Assembly (NCBI RefSeq): GCF_031769215.1
Contig: NW_026782299.1
Coordinates: 3,286,001-3,350,000, forward strand
DNA length: 64,000 nt
Reading direction: 5' to 3'
From: Ylistrum balloti
Taxonomy: Eukaryota
Below the pieces are notes generated by a model, which saw only the letters and a program-made list of their open reading frames with translations, was not told the DNA's origin and made no database searches. The position numbers and the translations under genes were made by a program. Shown piece by piece: positions 33,692-46,389 of this stretch (position 1 is its first letter; every line of letters starts with the position of its first letter).

Positions 33692-35154
33692 ATGTTGGAG
33701 ATATCGGATGAAGTGCCTGTCTGTGTTGTCCTTGACAATGGGTCCCATACTATCAAAACAGGATTTGCTGGGGATGATGGTCCAGTTCGGATATTTCGTA
33801 CAGTTAAAGGAACACCATTGCTTGAGGTGGTTACATTTCAGTTTTCTTTGTTCCCTACATTTCTTTATACAACTTTTTTTACAGTGACTGATAAATGGGA
33901 GGACCAATTTTATTTTATTGTGAACAATGTTTACGTATACTGTGTCAACGTATTTGAATAACAATTATGTATGTCTATATTATTTGAACCACAACTTGAA
34001 ATATAGACTTTACCTCAGTGATAATTGTTTGTTTGTTTTCGATTAAGCAAGAATCTAGAGTGTTACTTCAGTAACCAACAATTAATATTTCTATTACATT
34101 CACTAGGATGTGAATTTCAATATACATGTGCTTGAACTGTTGATTTTTGTAGGACCATATGATCAAGGATAGCTCAAAGAAAAAGTGTTACGTTGGTGAT
34201 GAGGTAATTGCAAATATGGATGTCCTAGACATTCGAAGACCAATCGAGCGAGGGATAGTTACCGATTGGGATGCCATGGAGACAGTTTGGCACCATGTAT
34301 TTGATGATATTTGCGTAAAACCGTCTAACGTAAACGTCCTTGTAACAGAACCACAGATGAATCCAAAGTCAAACAGAGAGAAACTGGCACAAATCATGTT
34401 TGAGAAAATTCAGCCTCAAGGAATGTATATTTTTAGCTCCAACGTGTTGTCACACTATGCGTGCGGACGGGTGTCAGGCCTCGTGGTAGATTCGGGCTAT
34501 GAAATGACAAGTGTTGTGTGTGTGTATGAAGGCTATAAAGTTTCTCAGTGTATCTTCAGATCCGATATCGGCGGCAATGATGTTACTAATTACTTGATCG
34601 AACTTCTTGGAAAACGAGGTTACTCGTTCACTACAGCAAAAGAAATTGAGGAAGCTAACACAATGAAGGACAGATTGGCTTTTGTTGCAGAAAATCCTGA
34701 AGCAGTGGATGTGGATTCCATCACAAAGGATTATACGTTATCCAACGGAAATACCATTCACCTTGGTTACGAAAGGTTCCAGTGCGTGGAGGCCATGTTT
34801 AAACCAAAACTGATTGGAAGTAATGACTACGGTATACATGAACTAGTTTTGAAAAGCATCAAAAGTTGCCCTTTTGATACTCGACTTGATATCTGCGCCA
34901 ATGTTATCATTACAGGTGGCAATACAATGATAGATGGGCTAAGTTCTAGATTGGACAAGGAAATTCGGGCAGTATTGCCTACAAACATTCGAATCAAAGT
35001 CATTGCTCCCCCCGAAAGACGCTATTCATCCTGGATAGGAGGATCAATTGTAGGAAGTCTATATACTGCACGGCAAATGTGCATGAGACCAGCAGAGTAT
35101 GACGAATTTGGTCCTAACATAGTTTACAGACCACAATTCTTTAATTATTGGTGA
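33692..35154 (+). CDS. Divergent actin-like protein, copy A, 378 aa
   Basis: Exons 33692-33826 (GAG|GT) and 34153-35154. Actin-fold motifs: VVLDNGS, GFAGDD, YVGDE, PIERGIVTDWD, NPKSNREK, DSG, YEG, RGYSFTT, ERFQC, GIHE, APPER, WIGGSI, EYDE.GP. About 45% identity to beta-actin by manual alignment (170/375). Confidence 0.92.
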
Positions 35155-36119
35155 ATTCCAATGGCTCTTCATCCGGGATTGAAAGATATTTGTACAAATT
35201 TGAAACTTTATTGATGATTCAAGGTATTAGAAAAGGCCAAAATGGATCAGTTGTATAATTGACATACAAGGAACAAAGCGTGATATAATGGATACTAATA
35301 CAAAAGAATCACTTAAGTGCTTACCTACAGCTGTATTTTCGGCGTATGTGGAGTAGAACACCAGTTCCCTATTCAGGAAGTGTGAGATGGTGCCTGCGCT
35401 GTATTTATCAAGTTGGGATGTGGACACAATGCTGCTTAGTGCCTTTCACATTTGCTCCTGTTGTATATACAATAGATGTATAGAATAAACATGCACACAA
35501 AAAAATTTACATATCACCTTATGGTTTGTTTTACCGCTATTTATGGCGTCTAGTCTGAGAACCACTTTTTCAACCGACGCAATAGTGCAATATTTTGGGC
35601 AATGGTGCTAAATGTGACTATAGAATCAAGTTGGTTGTCTTGATCTGTCCGTATATTACTGTATTTTTCGTGTTTTCTCATCAGATATTGCCATATGGCA
35701 TATTAGTTGTTGATGTGTTGATCTGTAAAAACAACTCCTGTTTATATTGCAGGAATGTGATATTATACTAGATATACTAGTCTATGGTTATGCTTATATA
35801 TGTATAAGAACTAATGTTATTTAATGTTGATCACAGCGACTAATGCTACCGTGTTTTCTAAATGTTCATCACTAAGAGAGTTGATGAAAATAGGAAAACA
35901 TTTATGCTAACTAGTACTTTCAATACGATATAGAAAGAGTTAAGAAGACCAAGGTAATCAGCATTGATGAGAAGCCTGATTGTCAATAAATGTAACCACA
36001 TCATTATTTACGACAATGTTTCTAGAAAAAAAATGTAAATCTTGTATCATGGTGTCAGTGTGAAAACAATGTGGGATTTTAAAGGTTTATTTCATATATA
36101 TTGGAAATAAATATATTGA

Positions 36120-36330
36120 TTTTCCACGGAGTATGTTTGATCTATCATTAATGGAATGATATTCCATTCAAGATAATTCGTCCAAGTGTAAGTATCTGTT
36201 ACCAAAGTATGCATATTTGAGCCAGGTGATCATAATGGTATTGCGTATTTAGATTTGTGTCGTTTTTCATACGCTCGCTTCTCGGCACTTTTGAAATCCA
36301 GTTTGCGACACGTTGCAATCAAGATATACA
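36120..36330 (-). mobile_element. Possible highly decayed Penelope-like RT fragment
   Basis: Weak resemblance of the minus-strand reading to the Penelope-like RT C-terminus seen more clearly at 38600-38960. Confidence 0.25.
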
Positions 36331-42952: not shown

Positions 42953-45900
42953 ATGTCAAGTTCCGACGACGAAGATGTCTGTGTTGTCCTTGACAACGGG
43001 TCCTATAGGATCAAGGCTGGTTTTGCTGGGGACGACGAACCAAGGAGTTTTTTTCGGACGGTAGTAGGAACCCCTTTGTATGAGGTAATTGCTTGAACCC
43101 TTTTTATACATGGCTTTTTGGGAGAGACAGAAATACGCAAAAGCTTACAGTCACTCCGTTGTTTACCTTGAAAGAGATGCCAGTATCTGGCCTTATGATC
43201 AATGGATTTCTAATTATTGATCTCGTTGAATAAATTCGATATTACAGCGACACCTATGTAAGATTATCTATTCCAACGTGTAGAGGTGGTGAGTATTTAA
43301 CACTTACAAATAAAATCACTTCTTTACTACTGAAATCGAACATATTGACAAATACTTCGTCTAGGAAACAATACAATGAGACATCGTGATATGTTTCAAT
43401 TTCTTTGTTGTTTTCATTACTATAAACATCAAAATGTTGTATGATATTTATAATATCCATTCCGCCACTTTGAGAGCAAACAAAACATCGGATTTCTCCA
43501 AGACAAGTGCTGACTGCATTGTCCCAAGATAAATTATTAAACAAAACAACTTAATTCCGTCGACAGAATGATTTGCCGCGATAAAAATAATGTTTGATGA
43601 AAAGACTGTTTAAAACAAAAATTTGCGCGCTGTTTAGTTGCATTGTGCTTTGTAGGTTGTTTCTGACTGATGAAGAATTCACGGTTAATGTCGATCTTAA
43701 AATATCATCAATGCCTCACACGGGTCACAAATATTACACGCATTGCATCTAGATATTTAAGTGCTTCTATATCGTTTTGTTGTGCTTCTCAATATTAGTC
43801 AGACCGGGATGACGACTTTCGTTCAGGATACAATCTTAATTAGCTAATTTCAGCACTTTGATAAAAGCTGGTTCGGTTTGACAGGCTTCGCGATTGATGT
43901 AGATGGCAATGTTATCATGTGTGGTTTTGTGATATCAGCGGAGAATGTGTACGTCTTTGTTTTGATACGAATTCCCACAAAATTAATTGACCATAACTGT
44001 CATTCGATTTACTTATTGTTATATCTGAATTTATTCATGATATGACATTTTCTTATCGTCTGTCCGGTTACGAATGCTGTTTCCTCGGCGTCAACGACTG
44101 CGTCCCACTCTTAAACTTCAAAGGTTTTTAGGGTGAAAGACTATTGAGTTTACATTCAACACATTTCATGTTGGACACAAAATCACACGAGGTCTCATAT
44201 AGCCGACCTTTTTAATGCGTTTAGGCCCACAAGTATACACCCCATGCCACTTCTATTGCATAATAGGATATCGGATGGTAAATAAGTTTTTATGACTGTA
44301 TGAATGTAAATAATATCGGATGGTAAATAAGAGTATATGACTGTATGAATGTAAATAATATCGGATGGTTAATAAGTGTATATGACTGTATGAATGTAAA
44401 TAATATCGGAAGGTTAATAAGTGTTTATGACTGTACGAATGTAAATAATATCGGATGGTAAATAAGTGTATATGACTGTATGAATGTAAATAATATCGGA
44501 TGGTTAATAAGTGTATATGACTATGAATGTAAATAATATCGGATGGTAAATAAGTGTATATGACTATGAATGTAAATAATGTCGGATGGTAAATAAGTGT
44601 TTATGACGGTATGAATGTAAATAATATCGGATGGTTAAAAAGTGTATATGACTTTGAATGTAAATAATATCGGATGGTAAATAAGTGTTTATGACGGTAT
44701 GAATGTAAATAATATCGGATGGTAAATAAGTATATATGACTGTATGAATGTAAATAATATCGGATGGTATATAAGTGTATATGACTGTATGAATGTAATT
44801 AATATCGGAAGGTTAATAAGTGTATATGACTGTATGAATGTGAATAATATCGGATGGTTAATAAGTGTATATGACTATAAGTGGTAAATAAGTGTATATG
44901 ACTATGAATGTAAATAATGTCGGATGGTAAATAAGTGTTTATGACGGTATGAATGTAAATAATATCGGATGGTTAATAAGTGTATATGACTATGAATGTA
45001 AATAATATCGGATGGTAAATAAGTGTTTATGACGGTATGAATGTAAATAATATCGGATGGTAAATAAGTGTATATGACTGTATGAATGTAAATAATATCG
45101 GATGGTAAATAAGTGTATATGACTCTATGAATGTAATTAATATCAGAAGGTTAATAAGTGTTTATGACTGTATGAATGTAAATAATATCGGATGGTAAAT
45201 AAGTGTATGTGATTGTATGAATGTAAATAATATCGGATGGTTAATAAGTGTATATGACTATGAATGTAAATAATATCGGATGGTAAATAAGTGTATGTGA
45301 CTGTATGCATGTAAATCATTACACATATATATACAATGTACACGACTACTTTGCATTGTACGTTATTTTAATCAATAACTTTTCCAGGGACAAACGATAT
45401 CTGGTAGACCACTGGAAAAGTGCTACATAGGCGATCAAGTGATTGAAAACATGGATGCCTTGGATGTTCGAAGACCCATAGAGCGAGGAATCGTGACTGA
45501 CTGGGATGTCATGGAGACAGTATGGCACCAAGTGTTCAATGACCTTCATGTAGATTCTTCTGACTGTTATGCGCTCATAACGGAACCACCTCTGAATCCA
45601 AAGTCAAACCGGGAGAAAATGGCTCAAATCATATTCGAGAAACTTCAGTCGCAAGGAATGTACGCCCTTGGCCCTAATGTATTGACTCTGTTCTCGAGTG
45701 GACGAGGATCTGGTCTTGTGATAGATTCGGGTTATGAAGTAACAACTGTTGGGTGTGTATTTGAAGGATGGAAACTTACCCAAACCATGTTTAGGTACGA
45801 TATCGGTGGCAATGATATAACTAATTACTTAATCGAACTTCTTGGGAAATGTGGTTACTCGTTTACCACAACAAAAGAAATAGAGGAAGTAAACATGATG

Positions 45901-46389
45901 AAAGAGCAATGTGCTTTCGTTTCGGAAAACCCAGAAGCGGAAAATATGGACAACATCAAAAAGGACTACACCTTGTCTAATGGATCTTCTATATCTCTTG
46001 GTTATGAGAGGTTCCAGTGCATGGAGGCTCTGTTTAAACCAAATTTGATTGGAAGTAATGCTTGTGGTATACACGAAATGATTGAGAAAAGTATTAAAGC
46101 ATGTCCTGCAGATATAATCAGTATGATGTCCTGCAATGTTATTCTTGCCGGAAGCAACACAATGGTAGAAGGGCTGGTATCTAGACTGACACGAGAATTG
46201 CAGAAGTTATTGCCATCTACCATACGAACCAAAATCGTTGCTCCCCCTGAACGGCCCTTTTCAACCTGGATAGGAGGGTCAATTTTTGGGAGTCTTTCAT
46301 CGACGAGACAAATTTGGACAAGACCAGCAGATTATGACGAGTTTGGTCCTAATGTAGTTTATAGGCCGGAGTATTTCCTGTATTGGTGA
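42953..46389 (+). CDS. Divergent actin-like protein, copy D, 377 aa
   Basis: Exons 42953-43084 (MSSSDDEDVCVVLDNGSYRIKAGFAGDDEPRSFFRTVVGTPLYE|GT; missed by the ORF track) and 45388-46389 (1002 nt), separated by a 2303-bp intron. Confidence 0.9.
44266..45310. repeat. 45/42-bp intronic minisatellite (TAATATCGGATGGTAAATAAGTGTATATGACTGTATGAATGTAAA), about 23 copies
   Basis: Period 45 (44311 to 44356), with 42-bp variants lacking GTA; lies inside the intron of actin-like copy D. Confidence 0.94.

What the first reader, a model, noticed from the sequence alone, without database searches (positions are those of the whole stretch)
33692..46389. Tandem cluster of a highly divergent actin-like family (3 intact genes and 1 pseudogene)
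Seen in sequence: three co-oriented two-exon genes encode 377-378 aa actin-fold proteins. Copy A is about 45% identical to beta-actin by manual alignment, and the copies are visibly diverged from each other, yet each second exon is exactly 1002 nt with no indels or stops. Established: conventional actins are typically >85-90% identical across animals. The motifs here (DNGSH/YxIK, PIERG, DSGYE) do not match my recollection of the canonical Arp1-Arp10 signatures. Inference: this is a lineage-specific, purifying-selected actin-related family, analogous to the testis-specific divergent actins of mammals and Drosophila, and is probably uncharacterised.
Basis: partly seen in the sequence, partly recalled or inferred. 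Interest (0 to 1): 0.85.

Follow-up and report, generated by a model that had tools for sequence, protein, structure and literature searches.

The report
Scallop-only divergent actin gene cluster
Three intact genes and one dead copy in the scallop Ylistrum balloti encode an actin-derived protein family, found only in scallops, that keeps the actin fold but has replaced the residues actin uses to split ATP; it is a real but uncharacterised example of a known phenomenon, lineage-specific divergent actins.

Summary
The window comes from the scallop Ylistrum balloti. It carries three co-oriented two-exon genes (378, 377 and 377 aa) plus a decayed exon-2 relic. My gene models are identical to NCBI's predicted proteins, which are named only "actin, clone 302-like", "uncharacterized" and "actin-like".

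- **Divergence:** the proteins are 44-48% identical to conventional actin and 64-66% identical to each other. dN/dS is 0.1-0.27.
- **Range:** a family profile finds 12 members, all from four scallop genera, at 659-736 bits. The next single-domain hit, ordinary actin, scores 446 bits.
- **Synteny:** the array lies downstream of the same dual-specificity phosphatase gene in all four genera.
- **Origin:** the single phase-0 intron is at the classic actin 41/42 position, also used by a gastropod conventional actin. This points to tandem DNA duplication of an actin gene, not of an Arp.
- **Active site:** every member replaces G15, Q137, D157, G158, H161 and H73, and several F-actin contact residues.
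- **Expression:** two Argopecten members occur as spliced RNA contigs, one from gill.

I read this as a new member of a known kind (non-canonical actin-like paralogues). It probably does not hydrolyse ATP. Function and testis specificity are untested.

The parts
33692..33826 (+). Gene A exon 1 (45 codons, ATG to GT donor)
   Evidence: exon ends ...CTTGAG|GTGGTT. The spliced product equals P0001 (XP_060075318.1).
33827..34152 (+). Gene A intron (326 nt, phase 0, at the actin 41/42 position)
   Evidence: GT...AG. It falls in the same alignment column and phase as the single intron of Gigantopelta conventional actin P0116.
34153..35154 (+). Gene A exon 2 (1002 nt including stop)
   Evidence: Pfam Actin at 309 bits. 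A second individual (run X1) shows 6 SNPs here (2 synonymous, 4 conservative non-synonymous) and no indels.
36986..37870 (+). Pseudogene: decayed copy of exon 2, with no exon 1
   Evidence: 28-39% tblastn identity, stops right after the acceptor-like site, and many frame-breaking indels. In the DNA tree it groups with gene B (97/97). Run X1 shows 25 substitutions and 5 indels in the 1435-bp contig covering it.
39198..39329 (+). Gene B exon 1 (44 codons)
   Evidence: donor TATCAG|GTATTG. The product equals P0003 (XP_060075292.1).
39583..40584 (+). Gene B exon 2 (1002 nt)
   Evidence: Pfam Actin at 300.5 bits.
42953..43084 (+). Gene C exon 1 (44 codons)
   Evidence: donor TATGAG|GTAATT. The product equals P0005 (XP_060075362.1).
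44268..45316 (.). 45-bp minisatellite inside the gene C intron; it accounts for much of the 2.3-kb length of that intron, against 253-326 nt in A and B
   Evidence: Tandem Repeats Finder: period 45, about 23 copies in two arrays.
45388..46389 (+). Gene C exon 2 (1002 nt)
   Evidence: Pfam Actin at 292 bits.

Best explanation
This is a scallop-restricted (Pectinidae) family of divergent actin paralogues.

Shown:
- The family forms one strongly supported clade on a long stem.
- It sits as a tandem array of 3-4 genes downstream of the same dual-specificity phosphatase gene in Ylistrum, Pecten, Argopecten and Mizuhopecten.
- It keeps the two-exon structure and 41/42 phase-0 intron of mollusc conventional actin.
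- It evolves far faster than actin but under purifying selection.
- It is transcribed and correctly spliced in Argopecten.

Inferred:
- The family arose by DNA-level tandem duplication of a conventional actin gene before the scallop genera split.
- It keeps the actin fold and most nucleotide-pocket scaffold residues (D11, S14, K18, G156, K213, G301 in nearly all members; D154 in 10 of 12, E214 in 10 of 12).
- Every member has replaced the hydrolysis and phosphate-clamp residues: G15 to H/Y, Q137 to S/P, D157 to Y/F, G158 to E, H161 to S/T/D/I, and H73 to R.
- Every member has also replaced several longitudinal F-actin salt-bridge residues: R39, R62, R206, D286, and D244 in most. K191 and E195 are swapped in charge.
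- I therefore expect a nucleotide-bound or nucleotide-independent, non-hydrolysing actin-fold protein. It would work like an Arp, as a structural or regulatory subunit or a non-dynamic hetero-oligomer, not as treadmilling F-actin.
- The long retention of distinct paralogues suggests non-redundant, possibly heteromeric, roles.
For: Gene models and source.
- The gene models equal NCBI proteins.
- The source genome is GCA_031769215.1.

Family range.
- A single-protein search found members only in four pectinids, then actins at 48% or less.
- In the exhaustive representative search, the only representative above actin level is P0005.
- In the family profile search, 12 pectinid proteins score 659-736 bits and the best single-domain outsider scores 446 bits.

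Phylogeny and synteny.
- The family clade has 100/100 support with a stem of 0.92.
- The C-type orthologue clade has 82/80 support; the A-type pair has 99/98.
- A DSPc gene lies upstream of the array in four genera.
- The intron position is shared with gastropod actin P0116.

Selection.
- dN/dS is 0.08-0.27 with dS of 0.86 or more.

Structure.
- The AF2 model has pLDDT 92.6.
- Its best PDB match is actin: Z 48.1, rmsd 1.3 A, 44% identity. Arp-containing entries reach 17-32% identity.
- All 60 listed PDB sequence hits are actins at 317-328 bits.

Residue replacements.
- All 12 members replace all five catalytic or clamp positions.
- There are 38 family-invariant switches, enriched in subdomain 4, plus a deletion at actin residues 227-231.

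Expression.
- Contig L002 from SRR23580857 is stated by PMC10989825 to be the gill metatranscriptome of Argopecten irradians. It matches the genome in two blocks with a roughly 215-nt GT intron removed.
- Contig L009 from SRR19746222 is a spliced transcript of the C-type orthologue.
Against: - No RNA run was found for Ylistrum itself. The only run holding the locus is DNA, so expression of these three genes is inferred from orthologues and from NCBI's gene models.
- No biochemical data exist. Loss of hydrolysis and of polymerisation is read from residue identities alone.
- Some Arps with altered loops still bind ATP (from memory). Replaced catalytic positions are also common among other divergent actin-like proteins, so they do not pin down a mechanism.
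- When rooted on Asgard actin, the tree puts the family outside all eukaryotic actins. I take this as a long-branch effect, but it means descent from a mollusc actin rests mainly on gene structure.
- I could not include canonical Arp1-10 sequences in a tree.
- dS is saturated, so the dN/dS values are approximate.
Confidence: 0.75

Rival explanations
1. These are specialised but still filament-forming actin isoforms. They would bind ATP and co-polymerise with conventional actin in a particular tissue or organelle, such as gill cilia or sperm, like Chlamydomonas NAP or vertebrate ACTBL2.
For: - The length, fold and acidic N-terminus are all actin-like.
- The nearest solved structure is actin at rmsd 1.3 A.
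- Much of the barbed-end cleft is kept: Y143, G146, I341, I345, L349. So is part of the hydrophobic plug, L266-I267-G268.
- One member is expressed in heavily ciliated gill tissue.
- Trypanosomatid flagellar doublet entries rank second and fourth among structural matches, at 30-32% identity.
Against: - Q137, H161, G15, D157, G158 and H73 are replaced in all 12 members.
- Longitudinal contact residues R39, R62, R206 and D286 are replaced in all members, and M269 in the plug becomes S.
- Identity to actin is only 44-48%. From memory, known co-polymerising isoforms are much closer to actin.
Confidence: 0.2
2. This is the first reader's reading: a germline or testis-specific, rapidly evolving non-canonical Arp family, functionally analogous to mammalian ACTRT/ACTL7 and Drosophila Arp53D.
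For: - It fits the general pattern that lineage-specific divergent Arps are male-germline genes (PMC7038667, PMC8291977).
- The evolutionary rate is fast: orthologues are only 58-72% identical.
- 4 of 6 exon-2 SNPs between two individuals are non-synonymous.
Against: - No gonad expression data were obtained.
- The one sample with a known tissue is gill.
- Average dN/dS of 0.1-0.27 shows constraint, not pervasive positive selection.
- Unlike the Drosophila obscura-group Arps, which keep the ATP-binding and hydrolysis motif (PMC7038667), this family has lost it.
Confidence: 0.15
3. These are members of a canonical Arp subfamily (Arp1 or Arp2, the ones closest to actin) that automatic annotation mislabelled.
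For: - The length (377-378 aa) is similar to centractin.
- Language-model features score a 'Beta-centractin' cluster and an 'actin-related protein T2-like' cluster equally at 0.98.
Against: - All 60 listed PDB sequence hits are conventional actins.
- No Arp-named protein appears among the 120 best database hits in either search.
- The family is confined to scallops, whereas canonical Arps are pan-eukaryotic.
- The two-exon structure equals that of mollusc actin.
- The DNGSG and DSGDGVTH motifs that Arp1/2 keep (from memory) are altered.
Confidence: 0.03
4. These are functionless duplicates on the way to decay, or artefacts of gene prediction.
For: - One copy in the array is a pseudogene.
- The Pecten maximus counterpart of the fourth gene shows frame changes between tblastn segments.
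- No RNA evidence exists for Ylistrum.
Against: - Open frames of conserved length (1002-nt exon 2) are kept in three genera, in conserved synteny.
- dN/dS is well below 1.
- 100 columns are invariant across the 13 aligned sequences.
- Spliced transcripts exist in Argopecten.
- A second Ylistrum individual carries no indels in exon 2 of gene A, while the pseudogene has five.
Confidence: 0.03

Closest known systems
Conventional (cytoplasmic or muscle) actin of molluscs and other eukaryotes
   Same: - Pfam Actin domain over the full length, and a length of about 376 aa.
- Predicted fold superimposes on actin: Z 48.1, rmsd 1.3 A.
- Acidic N-terminus.
- Identical single phase-0 intron at codon 41/42, as in Gigantopelta actin.
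   Different: - Only 44-48% identical, whereas conventional actins form one tight clade.
- G15, Q137, D157, G158, H161 and H73 are replaced, along with several filament-contact residues.
- 5-residue deletion at residues 227-231, and C374 is lost.
- Two extra C-terminal residues.
- The evolutionary rate is much higher.
Lineage-specific non-canonical Arps or actin-like proteins: Drosophila Arp53D and obscura-group D-ActL1-3/Arp2D; mammalian ACTRT1-3, ACTL7A/B, ACTL9
   Same: - Actin or Arp duplicates confined to one animal lineage.
- Strongly diverged from the parent gene.
- Retained over long periods (PMC7038667, PMC8291977).
   Different: - Independent origin, in scallops.
- Arose as a tandem array with the parental intron kept, not by retroduplication.
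- The ATP hydrolysis motif is lost, whereas the obscura Arps preserve it.
- Testis bias is untested; the only known tissue is gill.
Canonical Arps with degenerate nucleotide sites (nuclear Arp4, Arp7/9, Arp8)
   Same: - Actin fold used as a non-polymerising, structural subunit.
- Altered phosphate loops.
- From memory, Arp4 carries an aromatic residue at the position of G15.
   Different: - 17-31% identity in structural alignment to entries containing them.
- They carry large insertions and are pan-eukaryotic.
- The scallop proteins have no insertions and are actin-sized.

Membership tests
Actin superfamily, Pfam PF00022 (Actin) | Full-length match to the Actin profile above the gathering score | tested here: met
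   292-309 bits against a cut-off of 27, covering profile positions 40-407 from exon 2 alone.
Actin superfamily, Pfam PF00022 (Actin) | Four-subdomain actin fold | tested here: met
   AF2 pLDDT 92.6. The best match is a yeast actin chain at Z 48.1, rmsd 1.3 A, over 340 residues.
Conventional actin | Very high sequence conservation (about 85-90% or more among animals) | tested here: not met
   44-48% identity to actins from animals, fungi, plants and algae. The family forms a separate clade with a stem of 0.92.
Conventional actin | Intact catalytic and phosphate-clamp residues (G15, Q137, D154, D157, G158, H161) and H73 | tested here: not met
   all 12 members have H/Y15, S/P137, Y/F157, E158, S/T/D/I161 and R73. 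D154 is kept in 10 of 12.
Conventional actin | Gene structure of mollusc actin (single phase-0 intron at codon 41/42) | tested here: met
   Gigantopelta actin P0116 has exon 1 of 42 codons. The intron falls in the same alignment column as in genes A-C and their Pecten and Argopecten orthologues.
Canonical Arp1-Arp10 | Closest relatives are members of one pan-eukaryotic Arp orthologue group | tested here: not met
   - the best non-family hits are always conventional actins.
- entries for Arp2/3 complex, Arp4, Arp7/9, Arp8, INO80, SWR1/SRCAP and dynactin give 17-32% identity.
- Arp1 and Arp2 were not separable in the 40%-clustered structure library, and no joint tree with Arps could be built.
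Canonical Arp1-Arp10 | Presence across eukaryotes | tested here: not met
   members occur only in Ylistrum, Pecten, Argopecten and Mizuhopecten.
Non-canonical (orphan) Arps or actin-like proteins | Lineage-restricted, strongly diverged duplicate of actin or an Arp, retained by selection | tested here: met
Non-canonical (orphan) Arps or actin-like proteins | Male-germline-biased expression (typical of the group, not strictly defining) | not testable with these tools
   No RNA run was found for Ylistrum. The only tissue-labelled evidence is gill RNA in Argopecten.

The most novel reading that the evidence does not exclude
The four anciently separated paralogue types (A, D, B, C) may be catalytically dead actin-fold subunits that assemble with each other into a scallop-specific hetero-oligomer or non-dynamic hetero-polymer. 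The assembly would use the remodelled, family-conserved pointed-end surface: subdomain 4 switches, the K191E/E195K charge swap and the 227-231 deletion. That would be a new cytoskeletal element evolved from actin within one bivalve family, possibly tied to gill or ciliary biology.
Probability: 0.15. Interest if true: 0.7.

Novelty: new member of a known kind. Interest (0 to 1): 0.45.

Why it matters
Actin is among the most constrained eukaryotic proteins, so lineages where a duplicate escapes that constraint and is still kept for a very long time are natural experiments on what the actin fold can become.

This case has several useful properties:
- It is a clean one: a discrete clade with a gap of more than 200 bits to everything else.
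- Synteny is conserved across four genera.
- Three to four paralogues are retained.
- The ATP-hydrolysis machinery is replaced in a uniform way.

The case extends the 'non-canonical Arp' phenomenon, known from Drosophila and mammals, to molluscs. It also offers tractable proteins for testing whether a pseudo-ATPase actin can still bind nucleotide, polymerise or cap filaments.

It is not a new principle. Divergent actin-like proteins are numerous: 3356 representatives score below E 1e-30.

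Tried and rejected
- **Shallow structure prediction.** The first AF2 run, on a 17-sequence alignment, gave pLDDT 57.7. I discarded it and repeated with 150 sequences.
- **RNA evidence in Ylistrum.** The run search returned one run, which proved to be genomic DNA of another individual: even depth over introns and intergenic DNA, and no splice joints. 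It was useful only for polymorphism.
- **Nearest 'relatives' in the representative tree.** P0217, P0194, P0204, P0161 and others are unnamed metagenome or protist (Entamoeba, Anaeramoeba) divergent actins on long branches. P0194 is intronless on a compact contig beside another actin. I rejected them as orthologues.
- **High-scoring double-domain hits.** The Aplysia, Biomphalaria, Liolophura and Psilocybe hits of 536-702 aa are double-actin-domain models, not family members.
- **Pseudogene orthology.** I considered that the Ylistrum pseudogene is the dead orthologue of the Argopecten fourth gene, which occupies the same position. The DNA tree instead joins it to Ylistrum gene B, so this stays open.
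- **Loop-segment searches.** PDB searches with only the altered loop segments still returned only actins.
- **ESM Atlas features.** They did not discriminate between Arp-T2-like, centractin and actin clusters.
- **Accession and run-id literature searches.** These found no paper on the genes. The P0004 contig look-up failed.

Full report
**1. What is there**

The region holds three long + strand ORFs. Short upstream exons with GT donors and AG acceptors complete them.
- The spliced models are A 33692-33826 + 34153-35154, B 39198-39329 + 39583-40584 and C 42953-43084 + 45388-46389.
- They translate to 378, 377 and 377 aa. Each is identical to an NCBI-predicted protein of the scallop Ylistrum balloti: XP_060075318.1 'actin, clone 302-like', XP_060075292.1 'uncharacterized protein LOC132554981' and XP_060075362.1 'actin-like'.
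- The contig is JAUZWB010000660.1 of GCA_031769215.1.
- Every second exon is 1002 nt, and the three align without indels.
- A fourth actin-like stretch at about 36986-37870 is an exon-2 relic. It has stops right after its acceptor-like site and many frame-breaking indels, and no exon 1 was found. In a DNA tree it joins gene B (97/97).

**2. What kind of protein**

- All three match Pfam Actin at 292-309 bits.
- The 60 best solved-structure sequence hits are all conventional actins, at 317-328 bits.
- An AlphaFold model built on 150 sequences has pLDDT 92.6.
- Aligned against 48,161 representative chains, its best match is a yeast actin: Z 48.1, rmsd 1.3 A, 44% identity.
- Entries containing Arp3, Arp4, Arp5/8 (INO80), Arp6 (SWR1/SRCAP), Arp7/9 and dynactin's pointed-end Arp give 17-32% identity.
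- Arp1 and Arp2 are not separated from actin in that 40%-clustered library. This is a limit of the test.

**3. How far the family reaches**

- A single-protein search of 5.8 billion clusters found close relatives (55-71% identity) only in Pecten maximus, Mizuhopecten yessoensis and Argopecten irradians. After those come conventional actins at 48% or less.
- An exhaustive HMMER scan of 1.84 billion 50%-representatives returned one family representative (P0005). Everything below it was at actin level.
- A profile of 13 family sequences scored 12 pectinid proteins at 659-736 bits. The best single-domain outsider scored 446 bits, although oyster, clam and gastropod actins were present in the list.
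- Hits in between are double-actin-domain gene models.
- In trees the family is one clade (100/100) on a stem of 0.63-0.92 substitutions per site.
- The representatives that fall near it are protist or metagenome divergent actins on long branches. I do not regard them as kin.

**4. History**

The array lies downstream of a dual-specificity phosphatase (DSPc) gene in all four genera.
- Ylistrum.
- Argopecten.
- Pecten.
- Mizuhopecten.

Other points on history:
- The downstream neighbour differs in each genus.
- Gene order and tree agree for the last gene: the C-type clade has 82/80 support. The A-type pair Pecten/Argopecten has 99/98.
- Argopecten has a fourth intact gene between its A-type and B-type genes. 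Pecten has a copy there whose tblastn segments change frame. Ylistrum has the pseudogene in that interval.
- Mizuhopecten has three genes, two of them 90% identical.
- The array therefore predates the split of these genera and has since gained and lost members.
- The single intron is phase 0 and lies at the classic actin 41/42 position. A conventional-type actin of the gastropod Gigantopelta has exactly this two-exon structure, and so do the Pecten and Argopecten family genes.
- I infer a DNA-level tandem duplication of a conventional actin gene. That excludes both retroposition and descent from a multi-intron canonical Arp.

**5. Selection**

- Nei-Gojobori estimates for all 21 pairs among seven coding sequences give dN 0.17-0.31, dS 0.86-3.3 (saturated) and dN/dS 0.08-0.27.
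- 100 columns are invariant among the 13 family sequences.
- A second Ylistrum individual (run X1, genomic contigs) differs in gene A exon 2 by six substitutions: 2 synonymous, and 4 conservative non-synonymous (I/L, V/M, K/R, T/P). It carries no indels there.
- The contig over the pseudogene carries 25 substitutions and 5 indels.

The genes are constrained, though far less so than actin.

**6. Expression**

- No RNA run was found for Ylistrum.
- The fourth Argopecten gene was recovered as protein P0013 from a 2083-nt contig of SRR23580857. PMC10989825 states that this run is the metatranscriptome of A. irradians gill.
- That contig matches the genome in two blocks (100% and 99.8%), with a GT-started intron of about 215 nt removed at the family's intron position.
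- A second contig, from SRR19746222 (tissue unknown), is a spliced transcript of the Argopecten C-type gene, the orthologue of window gene C.

So family members are transcribed and spliced, at least once in a somatic tissue.

**7. What the sequence says about mechanism (inference)**

These points use actin numbering from an alignment with eight conventional actins.
- **Kept in all or nearly all 12 members:** D11, N12, G13, S14, K18, S155, G156, K213, G301 and M305. D154 and E214 are each kept in 10 of 12.
- **Replaced in all 12 members, in a uniform way:** G15 to H/Y, Q137 to S/P, D157 to Y/F, G158 to E, H161 to S/T/D/I and H73 to R.
- **Role of these residues:** by established knowledge of actin, Q137 and H161 position and activate the attacking water. 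The backbone of G15 and of D157-G158 clamps the phosphates.
- **Prediction:** I therefore expect ATP hydrolysis to be lost or very slow, and nucleotide binding to be altered.
- **Filament contacts changed:** R39 to L/F, R62 to M/T/I (a gap in one member), R206 to I/V/Q, D286 to P, D244 to N in most, and M269 in the plug to S. K191 and E195 are swapped in charge. Residues 227-231 are deleted, C374 is lost, and the C-terminus is two residues longer.
- **Family-invariant switches:** there are 38, densest in subdomain 4 (19% of its positions). That defines a new conserved surface at the pointed end.
- **Proposed role:** this fits an Arp-like job as a non-hydrolysing structural or regulatory subunit, or a hetero-oligomer of the paralogues. 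Ordinary treadmilling filaments fit less well.
- **Caveat:** replaced catalytic positions are common among other divergent actin-like proteins. The Y15/Y157/E158 combination also recurs in two unrelated ones (P0191, P0194).

**8. Comparison with what is known**

The closest concept is the 'non-canonical' or orphan Arp: lineage-specific, diverged actin or Arp duplicates. Examples are Drosophila Arp53D, the obscura-group D-ActL1-3/Arp2D and mammalian ACTRT/ACTL7, which are mostly testis-biased (PMC7038667, PMC8291977).

The scallop family shares lineage restriction, divergence and retention. It differs in four ways:
- Its origin is independent.
- It keeps the parental intron in a tandem array.
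- It has lost the ATP-hydrolysis motif, which the obscura Arps preserve.
- Its only known tissue is gill.

It fails the tests for conventional actin and for canonical Arps (see the membership table).

**9. Verdict**

- The finding is real, and it is a discrete, scallop-only actin-derived family.
- NCBI has already predicted the genes, but I found nothing on them in the literature.
- I rate it a new member of a known kind, with moderate interest.
I checked it and confirm it.
- Still open: a joint tree with the canonical Arps, tissue-resolved expression and any biochemistry.

Noticed in passing
window 31180-32886: A block of minisatellites lies just upstream of gene A: a 28-bp unit in about 20 copies, then 42-bp units in about 18-23 copies, at 84-97% matches.
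   Followed up: no
window 46805-47300: An 18-bp minisatellite of about 27 copies lies about 400 bp downstream of gene C. It produces the repetitive 'SVYQS...' ORF on the minus strand.
   Followed up: no
window 38600-39000: A high-copy interspersed repeat lies about 200-600 bp upstream of the gene B start codon. Summed contig depth in run X1 rises to about 230-4960 against about 10 elsewhere, with many loose ends. No tRNA or Rfam match was found.
   Followed up: partly
L007 16657-17999 (Argopecten irradians CM084265.1): An intact fourth family gene lies between the annotated A-type and B-type genes. It does not appear among the called genes of the locus, yet it is present as a spliced gill RNA contig (P0013/L002).
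   Followed up: yes
L008 13900-15280 (Pecten maximus LR736848.1): A fourth family copy lies here whose exon-2 tblastn segments fall in three different frames. It is either a pseudogene or an assembly error. NCBI's 431-aa 'isoform X1' model spans several genes of the array.
   Followed up: partly
window about 24141-27211 and about 49100-53766: The neighbours are a 197-aa dual-specificity phosphatase gene (DSPc) upstream on the + strand and a 252-aa gene without Pfam hits downstream on the - strand. The DSPc gene is syntenic in four scallop genera; the downstream neighbour differs in each.
   Followed up: partly
proteins P0191 and P0194 (not in the window): Two unrelated divergent actin-like proteins, one from a EukProt transcriptome and one from a compact intronless Logan contig, also carry Y157-E158. 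P0191 carries Y15 as well. This suggests the altered phosphate-clamp arrangement evolved repeatedly.
   Followed up: partly
window 28000-48000: G over C skew on the + strand is persistently positive (up to +0.29 per 2 kb) across the array and its upstream flank. The rest of the window is near zero or negative.
   Followed up: no
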